Source: Perna viridis (Eukaryota). Taken from it: 64,000 nucleotides of DNA. The notes under the pieces were generated by a model. It ran no database searches. It was not told the DNA's origin and was given only the letters and a program-made list of their open reading frames with translations. Location: assembly GCA_037379345.1 (NCBI GenBank), contig CM074514.1, positions 27,032,001 through 27,096,000 on the forward strand. Direction: 5' to 3'. This document shows positions 5,747 through 25,003 of the stretch, one piece after another. Position 1 is the stretch's first letter; each line of letters starts with the position of its first letter. The position numbers and the translations under genes were made by a program.

Positions 5747-5752
5747 TTTATT
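5747..5752 (-). terminator. Candidate polyadenylation signal (AATAAA) of the beta-helix gene
   Basis: tttatt at 5747-5752 on + reads AATAAA on -, 3 nt after the TAA stop at 5758-5756. Confidence 0.45.
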
Positions 5753-5755
5753 TCT

Positions 5756-8700
5756 TTAAAACCATATTTCTTGAAGCCTTCGCAAAAAGTCACCGTCAAC
5801 GACTTTAGACAGTCCTTCAGCTGATCGCAACATTTTCGCTGGTCCTGCCACTTTGCACGATTTGGGAGCTGGTGCTCGCCCAGTTTTATAGCCCTGGAAG
5901 GTTTTTTCTAAACCTGGCGATAAAATATCCATATGTAACAGAATCCTCGGTTGTTTTGAAAACAAGTTTTTTATCTTACAATTAAGAATTTATAACATGA
6001 TTAGTTTTATAGTGCAAGACAAGAAAAGCAGAAAGCAAGGATGTAATAAATTCTCACATTGCTCAGTGATTGAATCCGTGATGTCATCTGTAACAAAATA
6101 CATGTTAAACATAATTTTAAGCTTTGTTCTACAATACGTAGTTAATGAACAAAATTTCCCTTAAAATTGGGGAAAATTATTTTTTTTTGCATGAAATCTT
6201 CATTTTTCACAAATTCTACCCCAAAAAATTTTTTTCGCTCGCCATTTTTAATTCTATTAACGCCCACCTTACCTAAAAACCTAGATCCGGTTTATAGAGA
6301 TTACAATCCTTGCACTATACTTGGCATATTCAGAACAGTGCTTCCAAATATTGAAGCAATATTCCTATATTTTCTAAGCAGTAAGTTCATATTTAACTTC
6401 TTACATACCTGACACAGTTGGTCCTACTGGGTATCTAGGACCAACCTGATTTGGCAAAACGGGCTTTCCGAATTTTACTCTGGATGCAAAGCTCGCTAAT
6501 TTACATATTGGCTTCATATCACCATAAGCTGGAGCATAGAAATTCTGCTCGTCTTCCGTCTGAATAGACAAAGGCATTTGGTACATTACAAGCACCTCGA
6601 TCAAAATACGGTTTTAAATTTATTTATGCCTTGCTTAAAAGAAAATTTCATTTATATTTTCAAAATCCACATCAAGAAAATTGCTACAAAATATAGGTTG
6701 CAATGCATTGAAAAAAATGGATTGTAGAGGGTAGAATTAGTTTTAACCACGGCAGTTTTGTAAAATTCAATTTCTTATATATCAAGAGGAGTATCTAACA
6801 AATCAAGAACGGAACTTTTGTTCAAATACTATTAAGGACGTTCACATCCGCTGTTAACTTCATTTTCTACTTCAAGTTTAACTTGTACTTTTTTGTAACA
6901 AGGTCGCAAGTCCAAATGTAAATTTCTATTTTTATGTAGATAACCATTATGATGGTTTCGTTTGCTAAAGACACTTTTGTGGTAAGTTTATGAGTATGCT
7001 CAATATACACTTCCGCGAGGTAGGGCTTGGATTTTCCTCGCGGAATTGAATATCGAGCATGCTCCACTAAAGGGTCTAAGGAAACATATCCACTGTTTTA
7101 AGAGTTATATCTTGTTATATATTGTTTATGTATTGTTACCTGGATGTTGTTGGAAACTTTATACCATTCCGGGCCGTGCGTAGGGCCACTTACAAAAGTC
7201 CTGTTTACAGGATAGTACACTATGTTTTGCTCAATTCGGTTACCTAGAAGAAACATATAATGTATAAAGGAAAAAGAATATGAAAATTCAAAGACTTTAC
7301 TTGACCTAGCACAGGACGTTACTCAAGCAAATGTGTTTAAGGAACAACCACATGATTTTGAAAACGCCAAACCTGGTTAAGTAGAAGTTGGATACACAAA
7401 AATGGGTATCGCCCAGCAGAGACAATGGCAAAGCTCATATTACAATTCAGCTAAAGGGAAACCCAAACTTCATTTATACCGAAAATTAATACAGGTGAGG
7501 CACGTTGGCTAGAAATGATAAAACTTCCACGAAAGATTCACGTATGTAAGTACAAAATTGGTTCCTACTTACAATAACTGGAAAGGTCAAATAAGGGAAA
7601 CAAACCTTGCTTAAATACCACAGGCGCTTGGGGACAATTTGTGGTTTCTCGGTATTTTTCGTCTTTATAGTGTTCCCTTATGTGCCTCATAAGGGAACAT
7701 TATAAAAATACGCGGGTTTCGACGAAAAATACCGAGAAACCACAAATTGTCCCCAAGCGCATGTGTTAAAAACAAAACAAAACAGAGATAGCAGATAAGA
7801 AATCAAACCGACGATCGAAATAAAAGCAATGTATGCTGTGAAGAAGGACCACTTGCACCAAGAGAGTAAGCATTCTCTGCTTCATAGAATCATATTGTTT
7901 AGTTGCTATGTTACGCTATTTAAAATATAATGAAATGAGATTGAATGTTCTCAGATTGGGACTGTTTTATTGTTTGTGGTCAGTAGATATAAATTTGCAC
8001 TTTTATCTTAAGTAAACGACTGATTATCTGGAATGCATTTTAACTGAGTATCAACTATGTACTTAACCCAATGAGAATAAAAGAAGGAGAGTCTTTGTCA
8101 ATATTCAGGTCCAATATGGATATATGGATATATGTACATTCATCATACGAACAGAAGCAAAGCTTCGAATAGAACACACCTCACTGGTGGATATTACCTT
8201 CTGGTTCATCCGGGTCATTGTTTTCGATAGCAGCGAGTTTAGGATATCGTGACCTCCATAATTGACTTTTATATGGCACTGCCTGTTCAAGTAAATTTGC
8301 AGAAATAAAATATATCAAAATTATTGAGGTACATGCACTATGACTACCAGTACATGGAACGGATCAATGTGTGTATGACAAAATTATTAGCTCGATACGT
8401 ATCAAAAGGATTGATACAGTTCATTTTAAATGTTGAAGAGGTTTTTAACAAATAAGAAGGGTTCACTCACCCGCCCTGTCATTTTCACCCAAAACAGATA
8501 TGAGAGGGCACGCTTCTGAATGAAGTTATGGAAAGGAAAGCCCAATCTTGGATAATTAAGTAAATTGTGGTAATTGTACTGCAAAATTCGGACAAAACGT
8601 TGTTCCAAAAAGAGTAATCAAGGGAACCAAGGTTATAGCGGTAATCAAAAGAATGTAATCCTGGGACAAAGACCAGACATGGAAAACAGACATACACAAC

Positions 8701-11700
8701 AAAGAACATAAAGTAACTAAAATCATACATACAAAGTAACAAAAGCAAATAAGCAACTCGGACTCTGGGAGCATGGACCAGGTGCACCGGTAGGGTAAGC
8801 GTCCTCTAGGGGAAACTTATCCAATGAAGGGTAATAACAAAATTACCAAACTGATAACTCTAGGAAATATTAAAACGGAATATTTTTTAAAAATGGCAAT
8901 ATTAAGGTAAAAACCAGCAAGTTGGAAATCACCGCAATGGTTCTGACGGTTCAAGCATTTCAGGCAGTTCATAGAAATGGTGGGCTAGACCAGGTTTTCA
9001 AGCGCGCCAAAATGAGGTTAATTTTTTTCCGGTATATTACAATATAAACAGGCAGCATGAAATTATGATAAGAAAACATTACTAGTGAACCCCGTATACT
9101 TACATTAAGTCTTTTCGTCAGGAAGTCTGTATGTTTGTGTTGTAATCCCCTAGCGTCAACGCTTATCGAGTATTGGTGAGCACTATAGAAAACGTTGTGA
9201 AAGACACCGTTGTCCCGGCCACCTGCTATTCTGACATCGACATCGTTCTTTAACGAAACAAGTACATATTTTTTTTAAAAAGGAGCATGTAGGAAGGTAA
9301 ATAAGCTTATACTTTTTTTACAAAAACTTCAATGAAGCTTCGAAAATCTACTTTCAAGACCAATTATTATTATTTCCATCTTCCAAAAAATAAAAAATAA
9401 ACAGAACTCCGCAAAATCGCGTATCAAGCTTCCCGAAGTTTTTCTATTGTCTCAATTCCTTTTTACTAATCACTAGAGTTTTCGTATTTTCCAATATGTT
9501 TGGTTTAAGACGAATTTCAACACACGCATATCTCGTAAGCTAATAGATATGGGGAAAGTAATTTAAGTGAAACAGCGTTGAACCCATCCGATTGGTGGTT
9601 TTTACGGTCTTGGCTATCCTTACGGATCTCGCACGACCGCCCCTTACAGGGATTGTGTTAGTAGATGTCTGTTAGTAGTTGGAGGTAGCGAAGCACAGCC
9701 TTCGGGATACCTGACCGAAGAAATCAGTCAGAGTATGTCCTACTAGCGGCTAGGCTGCTCCCAGACCCCACGTGGGTTCGAGAGCGTTTCCCACTCTATT
9801 TGGGAGTACGTCAACATTTATGTGTGTTGAACCCAACTATCACGACATTATATAGTCCATGGTCTGGGAGAGTCCACTGTGATTCCTGCCCCCTCTCATA
9901 GTCAACCTCATGATGATATTCGTGTATTTTTCAACCTCCCATTGATTATTCGTTGTATCCTTATTAGTATAAAAATGTATATTTACTCAACTGGGTAAAA
10001 AAAACTATGGGCTCAATTGTTCGACTGTCTAAGTCATCCTGTGATAACACAAATAAAGAACGCAACATGAAGCCCATTGTCTCAGCTTGCTAGGAGTACT
10101 AGAAAAACTGTAGTTACACATCCGTTTTTTTTTAGTCAAATGTTTCCCAACTCAACCGAAAAGTTGCCTGAATACATATTTTTTCAATGTAAATCCCAAA
10201 AAACCCATTGGCGACATACTGATTGAGAGATATTAAGGTACCTGAAAATAATAATTATGGTATGCGCGGTAGGTTATCTCAGTCCACGTACAGTTTTAAT
10301 GAAAATTTACTGAATGTATCTTTGAACACACCAGTTGTACCATCGGAAACCTGCTTTTTAACTTTACAATGAAAATCTTACATTGAAGAACACATTGTTC
10401 CTAATGTCAACCGAAGAGTACTGGTCATCTAACATAACCGCTCTAACATCGGCCCCTGGTACCCTTCTAACTGTGTTCTGGATATGGTTGTTCTTTATAA
10501 GGTTTCCTCTCTGCAATAATATAGTGGTTATTTATTGAGGAGCTAGGATTAACTTGATTGATATAAAAGGGTAGACCTCGACATACTTCTGATGAAAACG
10601 AACATCATTACGATCATTTGATCTTCTTGACAAAGGGTCAAATTTGACATTGGAAGTCAGAATTCTGAATCCGAATAACAAAATACAAAATATCCTGGTC
10701 CTTGCAATCAAAATTAAATGGTTGTCCCCTCCTTAAGGAGGGGATGTCAACCCAAATCGAATATCCTTCTGTAAGAACAAAATTACATTTATTTGTAAGT
10801 TCATATCAAGGTTGCGCACAAGAGCGAAGGTGTTGATCAAAAGCTTGTGTGTCTAAAACGAATATTTGAACATTTTCATTTACTTAATGTTTTTCTGTAT
10901 GTGTTTATTTTTTTATTTTATGTGATTTGTTGTATTTGCTTGGTCTAGGTCTCTTGATATCCGAAATCCGATTTTGTTGTAACTGTTGACGGTCTTGACG
11001 CACTTTAAAAAATACCCACCCTAGTCCAATCTCTTCCGGACATAAATGCTCCACAATCACTAGTTTTAGAACACATTCTTGAAATATGGTTATACTCAAA
11101 ATGAAAGTCATTTCCCTACAATAGTATATACATAACAGACGACATTTAATAAAAACTAGGATCATATTCAAATTCTATTCTTGTCGAAACTAGTATATGC
11201 AACCGTGACTCGGTTTGTAATTGTGGAATAGTTCACTATAGTATATGGTGTATCAGTCTCTTTATAATTTTTGTTTATTACAGAGGTCACGGCAACTACC
11301 CTATTGGTATTTAATCGATTCTTTCGGTTACAATGAAGTCATGGTTGCTAACTATATTTTTGATACATGCCTAGCATGTTGTTTGCTAGGTTTTGTCTCT
11401 ATTTCTGGCATCGTCGGTTCTTCAAATTTCCAATACTTTTGTGTATAAGAGAATGCATTTCCCGTTGATTTCACATATTTAAGCTACAATAAAAACCGTT
11501 AATGAAAGTTAAACAGATACTTTTGTTTTATATATGGGGTATGTTCTTACCTCCCAACGTATACCGGTGTACGATCCATCCCATATTTTATTGTGATGTA
11601 CTTTTGTTCCAACTCCGTAAAGGGATATTCCATCACTTCCGGTATAAGTCGCTCGGCCGAAGTTTGATATCAGACAATCTGCGATCTCATTTCCCGATGC

Positions 11701-14700
11701 CTTTAAAGTATTTCTATCACCACCTTTAGAACAACCAAGGTTAAAATGTGAAATGTCCATATTTATATATTCATTTACATGTATAGTTATTTTATAACTA
11801 CAAGTAGTTCTCAGATGATGCCTTTGCACGCCAACATGACAGGAAGACAACAACAGAACCTTTGATACCGCCTTATGGTCAGCCACCCATCACCGAAACA
11901 GCGAACGAATACCCATTCTGGTTCCTGTCAAGCAGATCAACACACGTTTTCTTACGGGAGCGTATTGGGGGCAGGGTATTTCTTTTCTTAATTTGTTATA
12001 TCAAATTATTTATTCGTTATATCAAATTGTTAATTTGTTATATCAAATTACTAACTTGTTATATCAAATTATTAACTATAAATTAAAAGCTGTACTCTTT
12101 TACAGAATCTGTTTAAGATTCTTTAATGGCTTCTCTGACGGACAAGATTTTTGGCCTTCCCGTATCAGACCTACAAGTTGGGCTAGCAAAACACCCTAAG
12201 CTAACTCAAGTCAATGTTCAAGTTACTGAAGGAAAACGTTCTATGTTTTCTGGTTCTTCCTCCGATCTCTCAGCTCCTCAGGAGAGGAAAGAGGGTAAGA
12301 CAGGTCATACTTCCAATCTCGCCACAACCAAGTCTGGTAAGATATCCGGGAATGGTAGTTTGGTCTTTGCCCTTCAGTAATCGGCGAAATTCTCGTGAGA
12401 GGAAGGCCTTTAAAAACTATTTCTCCATTAATTCCAGTAGGAGGAAGACTAACTAATAATTTCAAATAAAAACGTAAGAAGTACTCAAGATTCTTGTGTA
12501 TTGTCAGTACAGGCGGGTGACTCTTACTACAGTTTCGTATTCGTACTCCTCTTCTATCAGTGACTCCTATCTCTTTACTCAAGCGAAAAAAATTCACTTC
12601 TTTCGGAGGAAGTTTTATCCATGCTTTTGAAAAATGAAAGTTATTCAGGATATCTGTCAGATTTTCAGGGTTTTACTATAGACTTTTACTCGTACCGAAG
12701 TAAACTGATGTCTTTCATCCAGTAATATCTTTTCTAAACATTTCTTTAGTCACTTCTCAATTCACTCCGCACAAGTGTGAATAACGTTTGACACGTGTCG
12801 CGTTGCTGCATTTTTGTAAGCAATTCGGAGTATGTCCGTTCATATATCACTGGAGAAATTCCTCTGATACACCTCTTCAGTCACGACCGGACAATTTTCA
12901 CAAATTTCTGGGATTCACTTGCATAGTTCCCCTTGGACGCCCACATATAAGCGCTCTTCAAAATTATCTGCTGGTATAGTGGACCACAGCCTCTGGGTTT
13001 TACCAGTTTACTCTCTTTCCTACCCATCTTCTATGGTGGTGTTCGTAGGAAAATGTTCTTCAGGGGTTCTTCCCCTCCTTTAATAACTCTTTATACATAT
13101 GCCTCATGTCTGGGTTATGGTACTTTTGCTCAAGGGAAAAACCTTTTTTCGGGCATGAGGCCTCCTGCTCAAAGCAGAAACACATTAAACTGTAGGAGTT
13201 AAGGGCAGCACTCCTTGCTTTATTTCATTTCAAGGAGGAACCGACTCAAAATTCTGTGATTGTAGCGACTGAAAACTCAGTTCTTACTGCTCCACCTTGG
13301 ACAAGAGAGGCCTGTATGACAGATCTTCTACAAATGTCTTGCGAAAATCCACTTCTTTTTCCGCTGCGTCCAAATGTGTTGTCTCAGTTTAAAGGAATAA
13401 TTCTATATCCCCATTCTGAAAACTTACATGTTCAAGCATAATTTCTTTCCGGAGAGGTATCCGTCAGAAAAACTTTTCTGAGGTAGCTTCCATGCACATT
13501 CATAAAGCAGTCTACAGAGACCTTCTATGATGCCACGTGGGCAACCTTCAGTGATTTGTTTTCAAGACGAAAAAAATGATCTAATCATTTTCTCGTTACA
13601 TCAATGAGCAGTTTTACTATTTTCTCTTTTCGAAGAAAACAATCTGGTTCATCCCACTACTAAGGGTTATAAATCTGCTATTTGTAGAACCCACATTATA
13701 TCAGGAGGACCTGATTTCTTAAACAATGGCTATTAAGATTATGTTATGAGAAATTTTTTATACTGAAAGAAATAGCCAGAGAAAAACTTATTCCACAGTA
13801 GAATTTTGGTTCTTAACAGACTCCAGCTCGCTCAAATGTTTATACCCAAACTCTAAATTGTTTTTTTTTCTTGTTATGGAAGGTGTTCAGAATAGCTCAG
13901 CTAAATCTACTTCTGGGTAGCTAGTTAACACCATTCACTTGCCTTATAAAGTGTATGGCAATCATATCTATTCATCTAATATTGTTTAAACTCACGAAGT
14001 AAGATTATTACCCTCTTCTTAGACTGCTCAATACTGCTTTAATCAAGTTGTTTTAGCCTGCCGGTGCACCTGATCCATTCTCAAAGTTTTGAGTGGAGTC
14101 CGGGTTGCTCATTTACTTATTTTTCTCTCGTTATTCCATGTTTTTTTTTTCGTTGTTTTGTGAGTCTGATTTCCCTGTGTAGTCTTTATTCTTGGAATAT
14201 ATGTTTTTAATTTCCGCTCGAAACTTGGTTACCTTATTACTCCTTTATCTGCAGCTTTTGTGTTGTTAGAATTCGTTTACTGATTCTTACATGTATTGTT
14301 GTATCGCATACTGACAACCTTTTTTACTCTTTGGTACCTATAATAGCTGGTCAACGAATTGATTTCCGCAAATTGCTCAGTTTAAGGAGATTCTGTTATA
14401 CGCTATATTCTGATTTTCTCACTTTGAAAGATTATATAACTTTTACTAACCACTATAAATTGTAAGTCTCACCTCTACGTTTTCCAACCTTTCAATCAGT
14501 CTTTTTTGAGGAAATAGAATGCGAGTTCGTAAGCTTTTCCGGTCATGAGTGATTGACCATAGAGTGGTTTCAAAGGTCTTGTTGTCTCCCTTTCGTTTAG
14601 CCTTATAGATGGACCATCTCGAAGTAATAGTGGTACGTAATTAGTTTTACTTCAAAAAATTGAAATATCATCAGATTGTTTTTTCAAAGAAAAGAACGGA

Positions 14701-17700
14701 GGCCTTGAAGTATTGTACTACATAAAAACCAGGCATGGGGTGATTCATCATATCTTAAGATAATCAATGAAATTGTATAAATGCATTTGTTATGTCCTAA
14801 AAAAACAGCTCTTCCTATGTTCTTCGATTTGATACTTATCGTTAAATATTTTTTGATTGGTTAAAGTGTAAAAATTCTGGCGGGAAGTAGAAAAACATAA
14901 CCAAAATCAAACTGTTAATATCTCCAGTGGGCAACTCTCACTTCAACTTTTATTTTTGAATACAGTTTCTATGAGGCCTACTGAAAGAATTTCCAATAAA
15001 AATATAGGGGATCTCCTACATATCTAGAAATATATTTTACTGGTTATATGTAAAAATTCTGGGAGAAATTTCCCAATACTTTTTCTGTAGTAGAACATCA
15101 TAAAATTTTAAGTTTTAATATCTCCAGTGGACTATTTTTATATACACTTATATTTCCTAATAAAGTTTCTATGAGGCTACAGAACGATTTGCAATAAAAT
15201 AATATTTGGGATTTATAAATGCATGAATCACCCATTATAAGCCTCTGCTTATTTTAGGCAGGGCTGTACTTAAATAGCTTGCGTTGGATTTGTTTAAAAC
15301 TCACTCATATCAGACGCCATTGCAGTTAATACAAAATGATGGAACATATACAACATTTGTTACTGAATTACATTCACTGACACTTTACACATACATAAGA
15401 ATTCTGTAAAGATGTTTGGTGAAGTGAAGAAAGCAGAGAGATTGAAGAGAAATAGCCACCTTAGGTTGTATAGGAAAATAGGAATGGAAGGAAAATTTTG
15501 AAGTGTATTGCAATAACTTATTATGTCTCTCAATGCCATGGCAACCTCATTCTCCGCTATAAAGCATATTTTGGTTGTTCATGGGTGTATTGATATCATG
15601 TTAGCAAAAAAAAATCTGAATATTTTTAAATATAACAAAATATTTGGGTGCGACTGATACTTAAATGGACCTGTACTTAAAGGTATGTTATACATTAGTT
15701 TACCTCTAATATCAATGCCACCATCAGTATTCCTGATTTCAGATTGTGTTATTTTCACATCAGTGCTTTTTGATAGTACCATACCAAAAGACCCTGGAAT
15801 ACAAAAAAGACACAATGTCAATAATTTCAACAACGGTCATTTTCCAATAGAAAGTTCTTTTTGCATTTCGTTAAAAGGCATCAGTAAGAGGTTGCGTTCT
15901 ATTAGTTTTGATCCTCCTAAAAAGATTAATTGTCTAGAAACATTTGTTATGTCTTTTTTTAAAATCTATTGTTTGCAATACATATATAAGAAATATAACT
16001 GTTTTGCTTCAAATACCATTCTGATACATAAAATCATGTTCATTTCTGGGTCACGATTTCATCATTTTAGCTATTTCAGAAATCTGCTATGTTGTTAAAC
16101 GAAACGTAATGCAATGGTCTATTTACGCCTTGGATGGAAGCACTGATTAAGTAAAAGAATTTTCAGAACAATGTATAAACATTACAAATTATACTTATTA
16201 TGCTTATCACAAAAAAATAAAGAAAACTAAATCTCGTTTAAAATTTTAAATTAAAGAATATACACATTTGTATGTAAATTGTTCGGAAGCATCGGTACTT
16301 ATTTTCCGCTTTTATCAGTGGAACCTTTCAGAAGCGTCTTTACTCTAGGTTCGCTGGCACATTTCGGAAGAATCTGCAAGCTTATTCCATTGGCGCCTTT
16401 CGGGGACGTATGTAAATATTTGTTGTAGGGTCATCTGGAAGCGCGCGTACCTTTGATTTGCAGGAAAGCTATCGTTATAAAGATGATTCGGATCCACGTA
16501 TTATTCAACTCTACCAATACATGTAGATATAAAAGATAATGTCGTTTGTTTTACTTACCTAAATTCTGAATCCTCATTTTCGTAAAGGATATCTTATTAA
16601 TATCGTTGCCTAGAATACCAAAATGTCGACAGGTCTCCACTGTAAACGCTTCCAATACTATGTTAGAAGAGCCGTCAGTTATTCTAAAATTGAAAGAACA
16701 TAGATCAAATTTTATATGTTAAAAACACGAACTGCAAAGCGCAATATTTATGTGAATTTTGAAGCCCTTATTTAAGCTTTTCAGATTTTTAACGGCAAAG
16801 ATATTCTATTCAAGAAAACTCCGTCAGCTTTACTAAAAGGCGACTAAATAGTGCTCAGAACCCTAGCCGGAGGCTAGGGGGCTCTGCCCACAGAGCAACT
16901 GGGATGTGTGTCCCAGGTGGTGGAATGGGGTACCCCTGGCATGTTACATGCTGGGGTTGTCAGGCTATAATACGGAAAACCTGACCGCAAACCATAGTGG
17001 TGCACCGTGTTGGGAAAGATGCCACGTTCCTCGCACGTTAAAGAACCCTACTGTGGTATTCTCCCGGAGTAGGAACCATAGGGCTCCGCCAAAGGAGGCT
17101 AAATTGTCCGACCCTACCCACCTCTCCCTATTTCCAGCGGCAATCAAAATTTGTCGACCCCATTATCCTTGTGTCCCATCCATTTTTCATTTCATCATCA
17201 TCTCATGTTCATTTTATCATCAATTTCATGTTCATCGTCTGAATATAGCTGAAATATTGCTGCTCGGACGTTAAACCCCGACAAACAAATCAAACGTCAT
17301 AATAGCAACATGTAACAACTGGATTTATCTTATACTTACTGTATACAATTGTCGATGATAGATGCTTGAATAATATCGTTTTTGTTGTAACCGGCATTTT
17401 TCAATGGCCATACGTATAGGTTTTTCGTCTTTCTGTCAACGTAATATTCGCCCTAATTATAATAAAAAAGAATCTTCGCTTGATAAAGGTTTCGTAATTA
17501 ACTCTTGGTTTATGTACATAATTTTTATGTACTTGGGTAGCTCGAATGTGAAGGAATAGAACCAGGGACGTAATCTTGGCCATGGCGAATGAAGATGAAA
17601 AAAGTACGGCTATTAACATATTATTTTAGATAACATTTACATGTACACTATGTTACAGCTTCATTATTAAGTTACTCCCCGCCAAAAAAAAACAACAAAA

Positions 17701-20700
17701 AAACTTCAATAGTAACACTGAAGCAACACTGTGATGTAATTGTATGATGTTTTGAAGACTTACCGGTTGGTCTAGCTCGGACAATACATTGACAAACCTA
17801 AAGTAACCACCCTGTTTATGATAGTTACTGGATTTCGGGTCTTCACTGTTATAGTGACCTATAATAATGAAGTACGAGATTTAATTCTGCACGAGATGTC
17901 GGATGAGTGTAACGTTGAAATATTTACCAAGGTTCAAAACTTTTTGATACAGGGAAAACGCTTCAAATTAACAAACTAAATTACATACTTACTTCTTTTG
18001 AATAATTGAATAATTTTTAAAATTGCTTATGACCTGAATAAATACTTAGAGCATTAAATATCAACCTCTTCACTTTGCACCTAACTCGCCAAATGCACGT
18101 TATAAACACTAGAGCACTACTTCCTTGAGCTATGCTTTATATCAATGATATCATTATTATTCATGATTTCAGGAGACGAATTTATATAAGACTTTAAGTC
18201 TTTGTTTCTGAATCCTGTAGTTAATTTGCTAAAGTACATTTCATTCTATTGTTTTACTTAATAAATATGTTTAAACTAATTTTGTCGCCTTGTCCATCAA
18301 GTCTGCATGACATTTATTCTTAAATTCATGCTGATTCAATAACTTTTTTTTTCTTTTAAACCCAATATTTACATCTTTTTTTTTAAAGATTTAATACTGG
18401 AGAATTTCTAGATTTTAGTGTGCGATTCTACTCATTTGTGCAATTACTTTTCATGTTGCTAGTATTTTCTCTGTTTAATTTTACATTTTTGACTAAACCT
18501 CTTACAGTGCAAACTCAAAGCAAGTCTAAATCAGGCAAAAAAAACCAGGTCACTTTATACCAGGTTCTTTGCTTTTTCTGAACATATATACATGTATAAA
18601 CCAGGTACCTGTCTGAATGAAACACGTCATTATATTAAACAGATTTCACTACTTACCTTCCCTCAAACCATACATTGCTGGTTCAGATAGTGTTGCCTTT
18701 TTATCTCCTGGATTTAGACTTGTTACCTTATACGCCTTGTCAGCCCAGCTCCAATACCTATATTGTTTTATAAAAGTATGTCAACCAAATAAAACATCCG
18801 GGGGTTTGAATTATTTCTCTGGAAACTGAGAATAATGAAAAATAACAAATATACACCAACAATTGCAAGAGGCTGCATCGTTTAGTTTTACCAGAACCTG
18901 ACCGTTTCGGGGTCCAATACAATCGCAAATTCTTGAAGTTTTTTCTGGTTTGTGACAGATATTTCGAGCAATAGTGTAAGAGCAAGAACAAAGTAACTTT
19001 ACAAATTTTGAATCCGTTATCAAAGAATTATATTTGATTGTCCCTCTAGAAAATAGTAAAACGACCATAAATTTGTGTAAGTTGTCTAGTTGATGTAGAA
19101 AGTTTTACCATCAACTTTATAAGATTTATCATTTGATTCGTTACTTGTATCCTATGAAGTAGAATGTGTCCATGAACATTTAAAATGTCGCTTTGACAAA
19201 AATATTTTCCGTAGCAGGTGAAACAGGTTACCAAAAATAATTCTGACAATGTTTCTCAAACACAACAAGGTCCTATAAACACGACCTAACCTTCATGAAG
19301 ACCATGATTAACCACTAAATTGACTCGTGGCTTACCAAAAACCGTGCGCCCAAACGTCTTTTTCATTTTTCCACGTCTTAGGCGCATCTGAATCAAATTG
19401 AAATGTTTTCTTGTCCTTGGACGGTTTAAGAATGTTGATGTAGTGCTTAAAATAGATAAAACTATTAACTTAATAAGTATATGACATTCTTGTAAAGAAC
19501 AATATGATTTCCATTGGATAATATCCCCATTTAATCTTCGCTTTCGTCGGTTATAAAATCAGTCCCCCCCCAAAAAAAAAAAACCAAAAAAACAAACAAA
19601 ACAAAACAAAAAACAAATATACGAAACTTTGTTGTATTACTATATTATACAACTGTATGTATCTGAAACCCGAAAATATGGTTGCAAAATAAAAAATAGA
19701 TGATAAAAAAATGTAAAAGAGCCATAAATGTAAAGGTTCGTATTGTTTTTTTTTTTTTTTTTTATTTAATATATATAATAATGAATTCCGTGTGTAGCGA
19801 CTACCTTTTTGTTTCTGCCGAAGGTGACTCCAAAGGGAACCGGGTTATTGATGCAAAATACAATAGACACAAACATATTTTGCTCTCTTATTAAACTGGA
19901 GCGTATAACAGCCTTTTAAACCTCCGTTACAACCATTTACAGGTATCTCTCGAGTTGCAACATGCTCTTTATTTAAAGAGGGTACAAAATTCATTTCTAA
20001 ACTAGAAGAACGCAGACTTTATCCCACCATGGTTAAAGAAAAGCAGTAATCTAACATGCTAACCTCATTCGGATATCGAGCCAATGTCAGAGCTTCACTG
20101 TTTTCAAAAATTTCCAGAGGAGCAACACGCTTAGTATAGTATCCATAGCCGGACATTGTACCTAGATCTGTGATTCCAACGCTTGGCAGCGTCACTTGTA
20201 AAACCTAGATAAGAAATATATACAAATTTTAAAATGATACAAGGCACCCAGAACCAGGATGTTTATACAGGATTTATGATTAATTGTTTTATTCCTATTA
20301 CCGTTATCACAAGTAACAATTTTTTTTTCACAACACTGTCACTGTCAACATTATGTAAGAAGTATTTTTTCACATCACTGTCACTGTCAACATTACTTAA
20401 GAAGTATTTTTTCACACCATTGTCATTGTCAACATTACGTAAGAAGTATTTTTTTCACATCACTGTCACTGTCAACATTACTTAAGAAGTATTTTTTCAC
20501 ACCATTGTCATTGTCAACATTACGTAAGAAGTATTTTTTTCACACCACTGTCACTGTCAACATTACGTAAGAAGTATTTCTCACACCACTATCACTGTCA
20601 ACATTACGTAAGAAGTTTTTTTTCACACCACTGTCACTGTCAACATTACATAAGAAGTATTGTTTACCTTTGATTTTGAGGCAGATGGAATTCTTTGTAA

Positions 20701-23700
20701 GGCTCCTTTGTCGGTGACTTTTGTGAATTTGGTCGGATTAATCAACTTTCCTCCAACCTATAAAAAAAAACAATCGAAAGTTTTGTTTAATTCTTAAATT
20801 ATTTTCTTAATGTCAATTTATTTATTTAATAAGATTCTGCTAGTTACCAGCTTAAATCGAGGTATACTTTTAATAGCATACGTTTTGAATTACTAGTAGG
20901 AAGACTAATTCTCTCGCGATATATAAAACGGATTACTTAAGACATTTCTATATGTACGATTTTTAAATGTACGAGAGCCCAAAGAGCTATTTTCATTATT
21001 ACGCGTGACTTGCAAAAGTTCCGCGTTATAACAATTTTTTTTTATCATTTTACGAATATGAGCTCAATGGGCTTTCGTAGAAATGCATTGAATACAACAG
21101 TACATAAGTAACTGATTATTTTTCCCACAGATATTGTACATTGTCGTTTCATCTATATAATACTACTAAAAAGATCGAATACGTTTGTGATATGAGGTAT
21201 AAATGTAGTGTTGTGCATTTCCCAAATTTGTCTCTGAAACAATCTTTTTTTATACGGAAAACGCGATTTTTTGGGAAAATATCCCAATTCGGAGACCGTC
21301 ATTGGTCCGTGTGTTATAATACGCTGTCGTATGCTCAATCGGAACTACTCGGCCATTTCTGCTACACTAAAAAATAATCTCGGATGCAAAAAGGAGAACT
21401 TCTTCTTGAAAAAAAATGCCGAAATTGTAGTCATACGCGACTCAAAATAGTACGTTCCACCGGGTGGCACTAAAAAATTTGGTTAAATATCACTAGAAAT
21501 AAAGAACAATAACTAATGTCAAGAATTTGGCGCGAAGCGAGGAGCTAGGAAAAAAAGGTAATGGTAAAAAAAAAATCAACCAGTAAAACTATAAATTTAG
21601 AATCGGATCGGTAAAATTTCTGACAGATTCTTTTGCCTAGTGCCTCCGAGGTTTTTTTGTTGAAAGGCTGAAGAGTTCCGATTGTCGCATGCTCAATCGA
21701 CGAACTGTTTGGATCACGTATACATTGTTACACGAGTATTGTACGTTCATCATTTTCTTAATTATTAAACGACATCCACCATTTTTCTGAGGTCCAGACA
21801 CGGAGAGGCGTAGAACATGTCAAACTAAACCTTTGTGTAAACATCTGCGACCGAGGTCTGAACCGCTTCCCCTTTTTATGTGTGAACTAGCATGACTGGT
21901 AAACCCCCTACCCATTGTTCTGAATAAAATATTGAATAATTTAAAATTCACGAATTTATTATGCATCTTTTAACTGGGTGGAGCAGAACATAAAGAAAAT
22001 AAAGAGTGTTCAACCCAACTCCCCCTCCCTCCCACCCCACCCCAAAAGAACAAAAACAAAAACTACTGGATCATCAATCACAAACAAACAGGAAATGACA
22101 TTATAACACATCAACAAGTCCCAGTTTGGGGATTGACCACATATTAGTATATACATATAAAAGTGTGGTTATGGAGTGAATGTGCGTCTGCAAAAAAAAA
22201 AACTCACGCGATACATCGAAAATAACCGATATCAAGGAACAAGGCTTTAATGCTTTAACTATCGTTAACAATGAAAAAATACGTTAACACCCTCAAACCA
22301 GACCGAGAAGGCCCTCTATAACGTGCATATAAGCAGAATTCATGATAAAATAAAAATCAAGGTTACTCTCTTGCTGCCAACTGACCATAGAGTGAAAACT
22401 TGGGCGAAGCCTCAGGATAATCAGCTAACATTGTTTATTGCAACTGTGATTGATTGAGTTTGTTTTTTTCTCAACGGGCCATAACAACTTTTAAAGTCTT
22501 CTCTTTGCGTTTGTCGGTGTCGTCATCGTCGTCGTAAAACATCAGCTCCCATATCCCTGGGTCAAATTAAATCTGGGACCAATAAAAAGCTTCTTAGTCC
22601 CAGATTAAACCATTTTTCCAGGAAAGTATATTAGCATGAGTATGTGAAACTTTGCTTAGTGACGCACCATTTAAGTTCTGGGGAAGGAGGGCTTGGTTTT
22701 TTCTTTGATTGTTAAAAATATTTCGCTCCTGACTTTGGAGAAAAGATAATTAGGTTAAAAAAACGAGTAATGTGAATAAGGAAAGAAAAGAATAACTCGC
22801 TTACATGCGTTAGAAAGGTACATAGTTTTGCGCGCTGGGCGCTGGGTCAAAAAGAAAACCAAATCCCCTTGAAAGTTTAATGTTCAACTCCTCTTAAACC
22901 AACAAAGCAATTTGAACAAAACTGCACACCATTGATGTATGGTAGATGATCGCAGATCCTTTACAACAATCACTCATTTTGTTTGGATTCGTCAAATTAG
23001 TACTGTGTCCGCACTTTGCTCATCGACCGCGATTTTGCGGACATCCTTTAGTATTACTTTAAATCTATCGAATTTTAAAGGACAATTTGCTCGGATTACT
23101 TTTCCATATTTAAATGTGTGAGTTTTTTTCCAGAATTGTTGGTAATACTGACGAGTAATTAGGCAACGGTTGTATAGTGGCCTGAACATTTCTTAAAATA
23201 GTGTAAGAATACTTACCAAATGAACATCGTGCTGGCCATGCCTCTTGATGGCCAAAGTTCCCGAACCTTTGTTTGTTATGACTGCGGTCTTATCAAGCTC
23301 GAAGTAGCAAGGGGATTTACACGGAGAACATACCAGGTAAATAGTGGCATCTGTAATGAAATACACAAGCCGATGCTGAAGATAGAGAATTCAGTCATTT
23401 TTTTGGTTCAAATATTGATAAATCTTTTGGTCTTTGATAAACCGAAAGGTTGCTTTCTTTAAAACAAAATCAACGCAGAATTTTAAATTAATAAAAGTGA
23501 GAAAAAAAACCTTCTTTACGGCTTTATTCTTGATAACTTAATGGTGCAACAGTAATGCTTCAACAAAATATTTGGGGAATAGGTGGATTTAACCACTCCC
23601 CGATTTCTTCTTTGACAACCATCACTTCTTTTTTATCTGTTAATTTCAGTAAAAAGGCCAGTTTGGTGACTGTTTTTCTGTCAATTTATCAAAACAACAA

Positions 23701-24085
23701 AACAACAAAACATACCACAAGCAAAACTAACAAACAAACAAACCATTAATATTAAACATTACCTTTATTTTTACTGGTAAAACTTTCTGCAGCTGACAAA
23801 GCCTTGTAGACGCTTTGCAGAGGCGTTTTAGCCCCCTTACTGAAAAAAAAAACACAATAAACCAATAAAAAATGATACAACATTAAAGAATAACTAAATA
23901 TAAAAGAAAATGTGAATGAGACGTTCCAAACAAGGATACAAAATTATTATTTTACTTAAGAATGCTTACCCGTTATTTGTATCTTTACCACATGGACTTA
24001 CGAAAATAACGTTAGTGAGAACTGAACCTATTATATTGACATAAAACAAAGCCGCGATTATACAACGGACGTTCATTGCGTCCAT
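5756..24085 (-). CDS. Secreted right-handed parallel beta-helix protein (pectin-lyase-like fold, GH141-related bacterial-type family), 753 aa, 20 coding exons
   Basis: Exons read manually on -: 24085-23970, 23839-23763, 23350-23217, 20757-20668, 20204-20064, 19445-19336, 18757-18657, 17858-17764, 17452-17340, 16683-16559, 15793-15704, 11723-11551, 11115-11020, 10510-10382, 9247-9104, 8282-8198, 7243-7140, 6559-6409, 6087-6058, 5913-5756. All introns are GT-AG, phases match, and the total of 2262 nt has no internal stop. Signal-peptide-like start MDAMNVRCIIAALFYVNIIGSVLT. Motifs in order: IFVSPCGKDTNNG, LTLARYPN, VWAHGFWYWSWAD, NVLSELDQPGEYYVD, GGDRNTL, GNDFHFEYNHI, SDCGAFMSGRDWT, RGNLIKNNHI, VMLDD, GGRDN, DARG, PYKSQLWRSRYP. 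Confidence 0.92.
7619..7765. mobile_element. 147-bp foldback/MITE-like palindrome in an intron
   Basis: A 45-bp arm cacaggcgcttggggacaatttgtggtttctcggtatttttcgtc pairs with gacgaaaaataccgagaaaccacaaattgtccccaagcgcatgtg (1 mismatch). There is a second inner stem tttatagtgttcccttatg / cataagggaacattataaa. Confidence 0.75.
8609..8806 (-). mobile_element. 3' non-coding tail of a Penelope-like element (dispersed copy)
   Basis: Reverse complement of the sequence following the RT fragment at 50275-50485 (accggtgcacc...catgctcccag...gttgctcattt...ggttcccttgattactctt). Confidence 0.75.
11987..12075. repeat. 21-bp tandem repeat, ~4 copies
   Basis: Unit approximately ttaatttgttatatcaaatta. It produces the spurious ICYIKLL repeats in the ORF track. 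Confidence 0.85.
12090..14050 (+). mobile_element. Degenerate DIRS1-like tyrosine-recombinase retrotransposon in intron 11 of the beta-helix gene, antisense to it
   Basis: Broken motifs in DIRS order: RT remnants (~12690-12940), RNase H HIKL*ELRAALLALFHF...VIVATENS (~13180-13280), recombinase STETFYDATWATF (~13510), PTTKGYKSAI (~13655), THEVR (~13990). Many stops and deletions; boundaries approximate. Confidence 0.7.
14059..14245 (+). mobile_element. 3' tail of a Penelope-like element (more diverged copy)
   Basis: ccggtgcacctgatccattctc...gtggagtccgggttgctcattta...cttggttaccttattactc matches 50295-50485 and 8609-8806. Confidence 0.7.
14870..15215. repeat. Diverged tandem dimer, period ~200 bp
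   Basis: taatatctccagtgg at ~14916 and ~15116; agtttctatgaggc...caataaaa is repeated at the same spacing. Confidence 0.65.
16830..17295 (+). mobile_element. 5'-truncated SINE with Meta-like and Deu/Nin-like central domains (bivalve MD-SINE-like)
   Basis: aaaaggcgactaaa (Meta-like, ~16835), gcacgttaaagaaccc (Deu/Nin-like, ~17033), 3' end aatatagctgaaatattgct...gacgttaaac plus an (aaac/aatc) tail. A second copy lies inverted at 29459-29672. Confidence 0.7.
20320..20659. repeat. 42-bp minisatellite, 8 copies, intronic
   Basis: Unit ttttttcacaccactgtcactgtcaacattacgtaagaagta. Units are contiguous with no unique spacers. Confidence 0.95.
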
Positions 24086-25003
24086 GTTCGCCAAACAACA
24101 GTTCTAGAATACAGACTAACGTTTTATATTTGTATGGTACATAAAGCATTTGGATATCATGTTGAAATCTTTTGGATGGAGTGATATGCATTACATATGA
24201 TACCACAGGCTATAGTTCTAAAACAATAACATATTGGGACCGCACGACTAAACCATTGGATCTATTCGGTTACATGTAGGAAATTTGCTTCGGGTTACAA
24301 CTCTGTACCATAATTACGCATAGCTTGCTTTTTAATTAGCTGAACGGTCTGATTCAAAACTAGTAGATCATTATGTTCTGGGATATTTCCTGACGTTCCT
24401 GATTGGTCAAGATGTATTTTACGAGTGGGCTATGACGATGCAACGATTTTTTACGATGAACGAAGTCAAATTGAATTCATAAAAATATCATAAAGTTATT
24501 AATACCTTAAGCTTATTCAGTTTCATTAGCTTTTCAATTACACAGAACAGTGTTCGTAGCTTTTTTGACCGTTAAATACCCTCGTATGTCTCGACCGCAC
24601 ATGCTCGGCATTTGACTGTCTATCGGACGATGATGTTTGCTGTAGAGCTGTAGACCTGTGAAACACTTATAAAAGTAAGCTAGTTAGATTATAAATAAAG
24701 TATTTTGTCTATATTGGTCTCCAAAGTTATTTATCATTACATAATAGATAAATGACTGTGATTAATGTCTAAATAAGGCTCATTGAAGATTTAGTGATTA
24801 TTTTAATTGTAGTTCGTCAATTTTTTTCCCGTTTGCTAACAATAAAAATTATCAAAGAGTACTTGTTTTTTTTTTTAATCTGATGCAACTGAACTCGAAC
24901 TAGAGATTTCGCCTTTTATTTCTACTGCTACTTGTCTATATGTAAATGCTCATAAAAACAAATTGTTACTTTGAAATATCAAGAGTTGATGTCCACGCAG
25001 CAC

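What the first reader, a model, noticed from the sequence alone, without database searches (positions are those of the whole stretch)
5756..24085. Intact 20-exon animal gene encoding a secreted bacterial-type beta-helix (GH141-like) protein
Seen: 20 short exons, mostly missed by the ORF track, splice with canonical GT-AG and matching phases into a stop-free 753-aa protein with an N-terminal signal-peptide-like segment. Known: the motif series ARxPN, WxxGxWxWxWAD, NxLxELDxPGEYY, GGDRxTL, GNDxxxEYNxI, DxGAxxxGRDW, LDD, GGRDN, DARG and PYxSxxWxxRYP is one I associate with bacterial right-handed beta-helix proteins related to GH141 (Bacteroides BT1002 alpha-L-fucosidase, Clostridium Xyn141E). I know of no characterised vertebrate or insect member. 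Inference: either an old bacteria-to-animal transfer that became fully intronised, or a patchily retained ancestral gene. Either way it could give a filter feeder an endogenous enzyme for algal, fucosylated or pectic glycans. The introns and embedded host transposons exclude bacterial contamination.
Basis: partly seen in the sequence, partly recalled or inferred. Interest (0 to 1): 0.85.

Follow-up and report, generated by a model that had tools for sequence, protein, structure and literature searches.

The report
Bacterial-type beta-helix enzyme gene in molluscs
This is a real, intact, spliced gene of a mussel-like bivalve for a secreted beta-helix protein whose nearest solved fold is a bacterial fucose-cutting enzyme; among animals the family turned up only in molluscs, it probably came from bacteria before molluscs diversified, and its substrate is unknown.

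Summary
The gene exists on the minus strand with exactly the reported ends (ATG at 24085, stop at 5758-5756). My model has 19 coding exons and 743 aa, not 20 and 753. All 18 introns are GT-AG, phases match and there is no internal stop. All ten reported motifs are present.

Spliced contigs from two public runs confirm two junctions exactly and four further exon edges. Two raw RNA-seq runs showed no reads on the exons.

The protein belongs to a family found in chitons, gastropods and bivalves, all annotated "uncharacterized". All other close relatives are bacterial (Planctomycetota, Verrucomicrobiota, Hydrogenedentota and others).

In the tree the molluscs form one clade with 100% support, and the window gene is sister to a Mytilus californianus protein. 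All 18 intron positions are shared with chiton and abalone genes and 17 with an oyster gene, so intron gain predates crown molluscs. This genome holds at least four paralogous loci.

A confident model of the Mytilus orthologue matches BT1002 (GH141) best (Z 34.4 over 486 residues). A family profile hits PDB 9RX2 (3.8e-57) and BT1002 (2.4e-29), but the Pfam GH141_M match stays below threshold.

I read it as a distant GH141 relative, not a shown member.

The scan noted a paralogue elsewhere in this genome (s1-771724).

The parts
23970..24085 (-). Exon 1: start codon at 24085, signal-peptide-like N-terminus, start of the mature protein (IFVSPCGKDTNNG)
   Evidence: Aligns with the N-termini of homologues.
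23763..23839 (-). Exon 2
   Evidence: Homology-guided splice model, GT-AG. Intron positions shared with chiton, abalone and oyster.
23217..23350 (-). Exon 3 (carries the Cys-rich insert shared only with the Mytilus short form P0106)
20668..20757 (-). Exon 4
   Evidence: tblastn with Mytilus and oyster proteins
20064..20204 (-). Exon 5, with ARYPN motif (20081-20067)
19336..19445 (-). Exon 6. I chose the acceptor at 19445 because homologues align over the extra 10 residues; an alternative in-frame acceptor lies at 19415.
18657..18757 (-). Exon 7 (completes WAHGFWYWSWAD)
17764..17858 (-). Exon 8 (end of the GH141_M-like insertion domain, NVLSELDQPG)
17340..17452 (-). Exon 9
16559..16683 (-). Exon 10
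15704..15793 (-). Exon 11
11551..11723 (-). Exon 12 (GGDRNTL; beta-helix coils)
   Evidence: An RNA contig in run X1 lies on 11550-11725 and continues elsewhere. Pfam Beta_helix E 0.0047 on the surrounding ORF.
11020..11115 (-). Exon 13 (GNDFHFEYNHI, DCGAFMSGRDW). Candidate catalytic Asp475 at 11058-11056.
   Evidence: The motif lines up with BT1002 and 9RX2.
10382..10510 (-). Exon 14 (MLDD). Candidate catalytic Asp515/Asp516 at 10429-10424.
   Evidence: An X1 contig lies on 10382-10481.
9104..9247 (-). Exon 15 (GGRDN, DARG)
   Evidence: An X1 contig lies on 9103-9247, with both ends continuing elsewhere.
8198..8282 (-). Exon 16 (PYKSQLWRSRYP)
   Evidence: The junction to exon 17 is supported by homology only.
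7140..7243 (-). Exon 17
   Evidence: Donor junction 7140|6559 seen in X1 and X2 contigs. The acceptor at 7243 is used in X2.
6409..6559 (-). Exon 18
   Evidence: Both junctions seen in the RNA contigs of X1 and X2.
5756..5913 (-). Exon 19, with stop codon 5758-5756. The short C-terminal tail resembles that of Mytilus P0106.
   Evidence: Junction 6409|5913 in X1 and X2
7573..7641 (-). Alternative or cryptic exon (at least 69 nt) with a GTAAGT donor, joined to the exon 17 acceptor in one contig of run X2. Homologues need no such exon.
8609..8807 (.). Roughly 200-bp interspersed host repeat inside intron 15. It has very high depth in RNA runs and copies on all chromosomes.
   Evidence: depth, loose ends; 4623 first-look candidates; 40 scored copies at 93-97% identity
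20323..20665 (.). Tandem repeat (42/85-bp unit, about 8 copies) at the start of intron 4

Best explanation
The stretch 24085-5756 (minus strand) is an intact, transcribed 19-exon gene of a mussel-like bivalve. It encodes a 743-aa secreted right-handed beta-helix protein with a GH141-type layout: an N-terminal helix segment, an inserted beta-sandwich domain, the catalytic helix, and a C-terminal cap.

It is the short form, lacking the Cys-rich C-terminal domain, of a gene family present in chitons, gastropods and bivalves. Every other close relative is bacterial.

The most likely history is a single transfer from a bacterium into the mollusc stem lineage, or somewhat earlier. At least 18 introns were then gained before crown molluscs split. 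After that came vertical descent and duplication, giving at least four loci in this genome.

The most likely activity is hydrolysis of a glycosidic bond in an extracellular polysaccharide. It would use a pair of carboxylates two helix turns apart: Asp475 in SDCGA, and Asp515/516 in MLDD. These correspond by motif and spacing to D523/D564 of the GH141 fucosidase BT1002.

Shown: gene structure, splicing of the 3' part, family distribution, fold of the orthologue, and conservation of the residues. Inferred: secretion, direction and date of the transfer, hydrolase chemistry. Unknown: the substrate.
For: Gene and splicing:
- Stop-free 2232-nt CDS with 18 GT-AG introns and consistent phases.
- Colinear exon-by-exon matches to mollusc proteins.
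- Spliced contigs in two runs with exact junctions.

Conservation:
- 45 of 47 columns conserved in at least 90% of 42 mollusc and bacterial sequences are kept, including all conserved Asp residues.

Family distribution:
- The top 120 relatives of a full-length homologue are about 60 mollusc proteins from three classes; the rest are bacterial or metagenomic at 30-37% identity.
- Unnamed animal-like hits all sit next to mollusc proteins.

Tree and introns:
- Molluscs form one clade (SH-aLRT 100) whose internal order follows mollusc classes. The window gene is sister to Mytilus P0106 (98).
- Intron positions shared: 18/18 with chiton, 18/18 with abalone, 17/18 with oyster.

Paralogues and host context:
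- Multi-exon matches on contigs C9, C12 and C13.
- Host repeat in intron 15. Bacterial relatives sit among ordinary bacterial genes.

Fold and profile:
- AlphaFold model of P0106 has pLDDT 91.3.
- 5MQP is the best match by Foldseek (2e-19) and by VIA (Z 34.4, 486 aligned residues).
- Profile against the PDB: 9RX2 3.8e-57, 5MQP 2.4e-29, GH120 XylC 2.6e-9.

Catalytic pair:
- D523 and D564 are essential in BT1002 (PMC12786026).
- The motif N-x-I-H-x7-D-x2-G is common to BT1002 (NLIHHYAKHMYDVAG) and 9RX2 (NEIHNVMKKLGDGNG). The window protein (NHISRMCSKTSDCGA) shares the N, the I and the D at the same spacing, but has S where they have H and A where they have G.
- The second conserved Asp lies 40-41 residues on, as in BT1002.
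Against: - The window protein itself was never folded or searched as a whole. Fold and profile results come from a 52%-identical orthologue and from family alignments.
- The Pfam GH141_M match is below its cut-off and is not found in this genome.
- HMMER aligns only the N-terminal and insertion domains to BT1002 with significance. My register for the catalytic Asp is a manual reading of printed alignments, and one insignificant alignment suggests a register shifted by one coil.
- Two raw RNA-seq runs, sampled at 19-24%, gave no reads on the exons. Expression is therefore low or tissue-restricted, and the 5' junctions have no RNA support.
- Only the best 120 relatives could be seen, so other animal phyla are not excluded.
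- Eighteen introns already in the mollusc ancestor is a lot for a transferred gene. That leaves room for an older origin.
- Bacterial gene neighbourhoods gave no hint of a substrate.
Confidence: 0.68

Rival explanations
1. The gene was not transferred. It is an old eukaryotic or metazoan gene kept in molluscs (and perhaps rotifers or brachiopods) and lost almost everywhere else.
For: [quoted passage not shown]
- A rotifer-rich eukaryotic cluster of look-alike proteins with GH141_M exists.
- A pectin-lyase-like shell protein is reported in a brachiopod.
- The tree is unrooted and the mollusc stem branch is long (1.25).
Against: - No named non-mollusc eukaryote appears among the best 120 relatives, although bacterial proteins at 30-37% identity do.
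- The bacterial relatives span many phyla, and the mollusc clade falls inside them under midpoint rooting.
- Bdelloid rotifers are known for many independent transfers (my own knowledge).
- This reading needs very many independent losses.
Confidence: 0.17
2. The protein is a polysaccharide lyase or a uronate epimerase (of the PL6 or AlgE4 kind) rather than a glycoside hydrolase. It could, for example, act on alginate or another acidic algal or bacterial polymer.
For: - After BT1002, the next structural matches are the AlgE4 epimerase (Z 29.7), PL6 alginate lyases (Z 28-29) and the RbmB lyase.
- One exon gave a weak hit to a PL6 lyase (E 0.8).
- Conserved Arg, Asn and Asp residues could bind a cation and a carboxylate.
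Against: - These matches cover only the generic helix (about 300-370 residues), against 486 for BT1002.
- No lyase family is hit by the sequence profile. The profile hits are GH141, GH120 and a GH28 polygalacturonase.
- The conserved Asp pair fits the GH141 pair in motif and spacing.
Confidence: 0.13
3. The protein no longer catalyses anything. It serves as a secreted glycan-binding or structural protein, for example in mucus, shell matrix or immunity.
For: - The family has multiplied, and the long forms gained a Cys-rich animal-side C-terminal domain.
- Expression in the sampled runs is low.
- Beta-helix proteins in shell matrices have been reported.
Against: - Residues that line the presumed active site, including every conserved Asp, are invariant or nearly so across bacteria and molluscs and are kept here. 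That is not expected for a mere scaffold.
Confidence: 0.1
4. It is an artefact: bacterial contamination, or a decaying pseudogene.
For: The closest non-mollusc relatives are bacterial, and two raw RNA runs show no reads on the exons.
Against: - 18 spliceosomal introns, a host repeat in an intron, flanking animal genes and transposons on a chromosome-scale contig.
- Spliced transcripts.
- No stop codon or frameshift, and 45 of 47 conserved columns kept.
Confidence: 0.02

Closest known systems
BT1002 of Bacteroides thetaiotaomicron (PDB 5MQP), founding alpha-L-fucosidase of CAZy family GH141. Other characterised GH141 members are the xylanase Xyn141E and the Wf141 endo-fucanases (PMC12786026).
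   Same: - Best structural match to the orthologue model: Z 34.4, 2.6 A over 486 of 599 residues.
- Same domain order, including the inserted beta-sandwich.
- Profile E 2.4e-29.
- Motif around the first catalytic Asp and the 40-41-residue spacing to the second conserved Asp.
   Different: - Only 13-17% identity.
- The significant sequence alignment covers the N-terminal and insertion domains, not the catalytic coils.
- Pfam GH141_M is below threshold.
- The host is an animal, and the gene has 18 introns.
- No activity is known.
PDB 9RX2, 'Parallel beta-helix repeat protein' (717 aa)
   Same: Closest solved sequence: profile E 3.8e-57, aligned end to end (1-716), including the EYNEIH...D and R-x-D/LDD regions.
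   Different: I found no paper or function for this entry, and it is not in the fold library used. It therefore says nothing yet about activity. It lacks the mollusc WxWxWAD and GRDW details.
XylC beta-xylosidase, GH120 (PDB 3VST)
   Same: Third profile hit (2.6e-9) and second Foldseek hit (4.8e-11). It is a beta-helix with an inserted domain.
   Different: The match is limited to the N-terminal 90-100 residues at sequence level, and the structural fit is much weaker (TM 0.41).
Uncharacterised bacterial beta-helix proteins of Planctomycetota, Verrucomicrobiota, Hydrogenedentota, Poribacteria and Armatimonadota (for example P0115, P0158, P0109)
   Same: 30-37% identity over about 65-75% of the length, with E down to 1e-198. 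They share the same conserved residues. They are the likely donor pool.
   Different: They have no introns and sit among bacterial genes that are not polysaccharide-utilisation loci. Some are double-module proteins of about 1500 aa. Their function is also unknown.
Animal carbohydrate-active enzymes of bacterial or fungal origin, such as beetle GH28 pectinases and nematode cell-wall enzymes (my own knowledge). In this same genome, the bacterial-type beta-propeller gene of scan note s1-759823.
   Same: A secreted glycan-active protein of microbial type that has acquired introns and multiplied in an animal lineage.
   Different: The fold family is different. The acquisition is much older (before crown molluscs), and no biochemical or physiological role has been shown.

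Membership tests
CAZy GH141 | Significant sequence similarity to a characterised member (BT1002 or Xyn141E) over the catalytic module | tested here: inconclusive
   Family profile against 5MQP: E 2.4e-29. The significant stretches are profile 27-125 and 260-328 (N-terminal and insertion domains). The catalytic coils align only at E 27-31. Single exons gave no 5MQP hit. dbCAN and CAZy assignment were not available.
CAZy GH141 | Beta-helix fold with the GH141 insertion domain | tested here: met
   Tested on the Mytilus orthologue P0106 (52% identical to the window model), not on the window protein. Foldseek top hit 5MQP at 2e-19. VIA Z 34.4 over 486 residues, clearly above generic helices.
CAZy GH141 | Pfam GH141_M (PF21231) at or above the gathering score | tested here: not met
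   16.8-18.5 bits against a cut-off of 27 in mollusc proteins, matching only the last 30-40 profile positions. No match in the window's genome. Above the cut-off only in the double-module bacterial P0100 (39 bits).
CAZy GH141 | Catalytic Asp pair equivalent to BT1002 D523/D564 | tested here: inconclusive
   Asp475 and Asp515/516 are conserved. The first fits the N-x-I-H-x7-D motif of BT1002 and 9RX2, and the spacing is 40-41 against 41. No residue-level superposition could be made, and D564 was not seen in any printed alignment.
CAZy GH141 | Glycosidase activity (fucosidase, xylanase or endo-fucanase) | not testable with these tools
   This needs recombinant protein and substrates.
Pfam Beta_helix (PF13229), right-handed parallel beta-helix | Match above the gathering score | tested here: met
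   Orthologue P0106: 45.5 bits against 25.9. Other homologues: 33-72 bits. The window's single exons reach only 17 and 13 bits because they are fragments.
Horizontally acquired, domesticated animal gene | Integrated in the host genome (introns, host repeats, host neighbours) | tested here: met
   18 GT-AG introns. An interspersed repeat with thousands of copies lies in intron 15. Reverse transcriptase, Tc1-type transposase and a Core-2 branching enzyme gene lie in the same window.
Horizontally acquired, domesticated animal gene | Transcribed and spliced | tested here: met
   Contigs of runs X1 and X2 carry junctions 7140|6559 and 6409|5913. Depth is low, and two raw runs gave none.
Horizontally acquired, domesticated animal gene | Animal sequences form one clade nested among sequences of the donor domain | tested here: met
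   Mollusc clade at 100. It sits in a group with 31 of the 34 bacterial rows at support 89, with three long bacterial rows outside. The root is a midpoint only.
Horizontally acquired, domesticated animal gene | Absent from other animals and from eukaryotic outgroups | tested here: inconclusive
   No other named eukaryote among the best 120 relatives, and unnamed ones are mollusc-like.
PL6 polysaccharide lyases | Sequence similarity and the Ca-binding plus Lys/Arg catalytic site | tested here: inconclusive
   Fold similarity only (Z 27-29 over about 360 residues). No PL6 chain among the profile hits at E up to 0.01. Site residues were not examined.

The most novel reading that the evidence does not exclude
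Molluscs, both grazers and filter feeders, carry an animal-encoded family of GH141-related hydrolases acquired from marine bacteria more than half a billion years ago. The family lets them cut sulfated fucans or similar recalcitrant algal or microbial glycans without their microbiota. That would make animals direct players in the turnover of these carbon-storing polymers.
Probability: 0.18. Interest if true: 0.85.

Novelty: new variant of a known kind. Interest (0 to 1): 0.6.

Why it matters
Microbial carbohydrate-active enzymes domesticated by animals are known, but mostly in insects and nematodes, and mostly as cellulases and pectinases.

This case differs in three ways. The family is mollusc-wide and multi-copy. 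It is a distant relative of GH141, a family now linked to fucoidan breakdown in the sea (PMC12786026, PMC13668718). And it had already gained its introns before chitons, snails and bivalves split.

I found no paper on these proteins, and every database name is 'uncharacterized'. If they are active enzymes, they add an unrecognised digestive or glycan-remodelling capacity to a major group of marine grazers and filter feeders, many of them farmed.

They would also be a dated example of massive intron gain in a transferred gene. If they are not enzymes, they show how a bacterial fold was reused.

Tried and rejected
- Exon-by-exon searches against solved structures gave only chance hits. NCBIfam gave nothing for the exons or for full-length homologues.
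- GH141_M was not found in the window's genome. The control genome matched, but no locus was returned, so I could not obtain the BT1002 sequence for a direct alignment.
- Gene neighbourhoods of three bacterial relatives showed no sulfatases or other glycan-active genes, so they gave no substrate hint.
- Rfam found no family in 5000-25000. Intron ORFs carry no Pfam domain, so 'embedded transposons' rests on the 200-bp repeat, not on transposase genes inside the gene.
- The raw RNA runs X19 and X20 gave no exon coverage.
- Literature searches for 9RX2, for locus names of the mollusc proteins, and for beta-helix or pectin-lyase-fold together with mollusc and gene-transfer terms found no description of the family. 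The supplement of the metazoan transfer compendium is not held.
- A 20th coding exon was considered and rejected. Homologue alignments leave no gap for it.
- The acceptor at 19415 for exon 6 was rejected in favour of 19445, on homology.
- The joined (spliced) protein was not sent to any database, family, fold or atlas tool. The join was made only inside sandbox scripts, for frame checks, local alignment to proteins already fetched, and the tree.

Full report
**What is there.** I took the largest exon by reference (window:11551-11721:-) and searched the 1.84-billion-protein library with it. It found Mytilus and Pinctada proteins at 48-65% identity and longer bacterial proteins at 41-52%. tblastn of those natural proteins against the window gave a colinear series of short matches from about 20757 down to 6419.

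I then built a homology-guided splice model, using candidate AG/GT sites inside each open frame and requiring compatible phases. One acceptor was corrected (19445 instead of 19415), and RNA contigs fixed the last exon.

The result is 19 coding exons:
- 24085-23970, 23839-23763, 23350-23217, 20757-20668
- 20204-20064, 19445-19336, 18757-18657, 17858-17764
- 17452-17340, 16683-16559, 15793-15704, 11723-11551
- 11115-11020, 10510-10382, 9247-9104, 8282-8198
- 7243-7140, 6559-6409, 5913-5756

The CDS is 2232 nt (743 aa plus stop). All 18 introns are GT...AG, and there is no internal stop. The exon count and length differ by one exon and 10 aa. Alignment to five homologues leaves no gap where 10 residues are missing.

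**How the spliced model was handled.** The joined translation exists only inside sandbox scripts. There it was used for frame checks, local alignment to proteins already fetched, and a tree. Those searches were done exon by exon by reference, or with natural full-length homologues as stand-ins. Fold and profile statements below therefore concern the family and the nearest orthologue, not the window protein itself.

**Transcription.** One read-laying run was allowed, on 5740-11739. Contigs of two runs recorded as probable RNA (X1 of organism A, X2 of organism B) carry the junctions 7140|6559 and 6409|5913 exactly as modelled. Other contigs start and stop at the edges of exons 11723-11551 and 9247-9104.

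X1 also holds an unspliced piece (7140-7461). X2 joins the 7243 acceptor to an extra exon ending at 7573, which has a consensus GTAAGT donor. Two raw RNA-seq runs of organism B, sampled at 19-24%, had no reads on the exons. Expression is thus real but low or restricted. The junctions upstream of exon 12 rest on homology only.

**Host context.** The window lies on a chromosome-scale contig of a 723-Mb assembly. A roughly 200-bp element in intron 15 (8609-8807) has thousands of candidate copies on all chromosomes, at 93-97% identity. It accounts for the enormous read depth there. Intron ORFs have no Pfam domains and Rfam finds nothing. Elsewhere the window holds a reverse-transcriptase ORF, a Tc1-type transposase fragment and a Core-2/I-branching enzyme ORF. 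Contamination is excluded.

**The family.** A full-length homologue (P0014, oyster-like, 953 aa) retrieves about 60 mollusc protein clusters:
- Bivalves: oysters, scallops, mussels, Pinctada, Sinanodonta, Mercenaria, Ruditapes, Mactra, Dreissena.
- Gastropods: Haliotis, Patella, Lottia, Gigantopelta, Littorina, Pomacea, Batillaria.
- The chiton Liolophura.

All are named 'uncharacterized' or 'Right handed beta helix domain-containing'. After them come only bacterial and metagenomic proteins at 30-37% identity: Hydrogenedentota, Planctomycetota, Verrucomicrobiota, Poribacteria, Armatimonadota and Sedimentisphaerales. Unnamed animal-like hits are all closest to mollusc proteins.

The window model is 52% identical over its whole length to Mytilus californianus LOC127721850 (P0106, 710 aa). 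It shares with that protein a Cys-rich insert in exon 3 and a short C-terminal tail. Many other members carry a Cys-rich C-terminal domain of about 250 aa that this gene lacks.

The window's genome has at least four multi-exon loci: C4 (this one), C9, C12 and C13. The C9 and C13 copies include the long C-terminal domain. The scan had already noted one such paralogue elsewhere in this genome (s1-771724).

**History.** I built a maximum-likelihood tree of 33 mollusc and 34 bacterial sequences. The molluscs form one clade (SH-aLRT 100) on a long stem. Inside it, chiton, gastropod and bivalve groups appear broadly as in the species tree. The window gene is sister to P0106 (98) within a mussel clade. 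With midpoint rooting the mollusc clade lies among the bacterial lineages; the root itself is not established.

I mapped the annotated chiton, abalone and oyster proteins back onto their own loci and projected intron positions onto an alignment. All 18 introns of the window gene have a counterpart within 0-2 columns in chiton and in abalone, and 17 of 18 do in oyster, where two exons are fused. The exon-intron structure therefore predates the split of the mollusc classes.

Together with the absence of closer non-mollusc eukaryotes, this favours one transfer from a bacterium into the mollusc stem lineage or earlier, followed by vertical descent.

Some points keep an older origin or patchy retention alive at roughly one chance in six:
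- Only 120 relatives were visible.
- A rotifer-rich eukaryotic cluster of look-alikes carrying GH141_M exists in the ESM Atlas.
- A brachiopod shell protein with a pectin-lyase-like domain has been reported (PMC4536745).
- Eighteen introns is many for a transferred gene.

**What it resembles.**
- Pfam finds Beta_helix and NosD above threshold in homologues. It finds the GH141 insertion domain only below threshold (16.8-18.5 against 27 bits).
- A 42-sequence family profile hits PDB 9RX2 ('Parallel beta-helix repeat protein') at 3.8e-57 along its whole length. It hits BT1002 (5MQP, GH141) at 2.4e-29 through the N-terminal and insertion domains, and the GH120 xylosidase XylC at 2.6e-9. I could find no paper for 9RX2.
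- An AlphaFold model of P0106 built on a 40-sequence alignment is confident (pLDDT 91.3, pTM 0.91).
- The best structural match of that model is BT1002: Foldseek 2e-19 with TM 0.53/0.62, and VIA Z 34.4 at 2.6 A over 486 of 599 residues.
- Generic beta-helix enzymes (AlgE4 epimerase, NosD, PL6 lyases, tailspikes) follow at Z 25-30 over about 300-370 residues. The extra 100-plus aligned residues are the shared insertion and C-terminal parts.

**Likely mechanism.** Of 47 alignment columns conserved in at least 90% of the mollusc and bacterial sequences, the window protein keeps 45; the two exceptions are G to S and R to K. Among those kept are Asp458 (GND), Asp475 (SDCGA, codon 11058-11056), Asp484 (GRDW) and Asp515/Asp516 (MLDD, 10429-10424).

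D523 and D564 are essential in BT1002 (PMC12786026). In the printed alignments BT1002 reads NLIHHYAKHMYDVAG around the only Asp near that position. 9RX2 reads NEIHNVMKKLGDGNG, and the window protein reads NHISRMCSKTSDCGA. BT1002 and 9RX2 share N-x-I-H-x7-D-x2-G. The window protein shares the N, the I and the D at the same spacing, but has S where they have H and A where they have G. The next conserved Asp follows 40-41 residues later, against 41 in BT1002.

I therefore propose a carboxylate pair two helix turns apart acting on a glycosidic bond. This agrees with scan note s1-774471. It remains an inference: HMMER does not align these coils significantly, one insignificant alignment shifts the register by a coil, and no residue-level superposition could be made. 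The substrate is unknown, and bacterial neighbourhoods were uninformative. A lyase or epimerase chemistry, or a non-catalytic role, remain possible.

**Verdict.**
- GH141 membership is not established. One defining feature tested, the Pfam insertion-domain score, is not met.
- The gene is one member of a mollusc-wide, vertically inherited and so far undescribed family, not a peculiarity of this species.
- No open-access paper on the family was found.

Noticed in passing
window 339-4118 (+): A single 1259-aa open frame just downstream of the gene, in a stretch with very strong A-over-T skew (0.29-0.40). Its only Pfam match is a weak one to the coiled-coil GAS domain (27 bits, below the cut-off). 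It may be a long coiled-coil protein exon or a repeat-derived frame.
   Followed up: partly
window 36802-38682 (+), 38666-39508 (+), 31799-32416 (-): A reverse-transcriptase ORF (RVT_1, 1.7e-26) with an adjoining ORF, and a Tc1/mariner-type transposase DNA-binding fragment. These are ordinary animal mobile elements.
   Followed up: partly
window 56930-57970 (-): A single-exon 346-aa ORF with a strong Core-2/I-branching enzyme (glycosyltransferase) domain (6e-46).
   Followed up: no
window 8609-8807: A roughly 200-bp interspersed repeat with at least 4600 first-look candidates genome-wide at 93-97% identity. It has extremely high depth and many internal rearranged joints in RNA runs. It is a young, transcribed SINE- or MITE-like element with no Rfam match.
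   Followed up: partly
window 20323-20665; L010 5240-6991: A 42/85-bp tandem array begins three bases after the donor of exon 4. The abalone homologue has a tandem array of about 35 units with a 40-bp period right after its fifth exon, each unit repeating the exon's last nine codons. Minisatellites at the intron starts of this gene in two distant molluscs may be coincidence.
   Followed up: no
window 7573-7641 (-): An extra exon with a consensus donor, spliced to exon 17 in one contig of run X2. It lies in a repeat-like stretch where raw reads show several differences. It could be an alternative first exon or a cryptic exon.
   Followed up: partly
G000 C9:2158570-2193438, C13:22720519-22738818, C12:3912637-3925388, C13:23349811-23359015: Paralogous multi-exon loci of the same family. 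The C9 and C13 copies include the Cys-rich C-terminal domain of about 250 aa, which Pfam does not recognise. A second C13 locus matches mainly that domain.
   Followed up: partly
ESM Atlas cluster (rank 28): A 314-member cluster of beta-helix proteins with GH141_M in 19% of members. It is 53% eukaryotic, mostly rotifers. It may be an independent transfer of a related gene into bdelloid rotifers.
   Followed up: no
L005 1526-7886: The verrucomicrobial relative P0158 sits about 2 kb downstream of a type V (C2c1/Cas12b-like) CRISPR-Cas locus with a Cas4-Cas1 fusion and Cas2.
   Followed up: no
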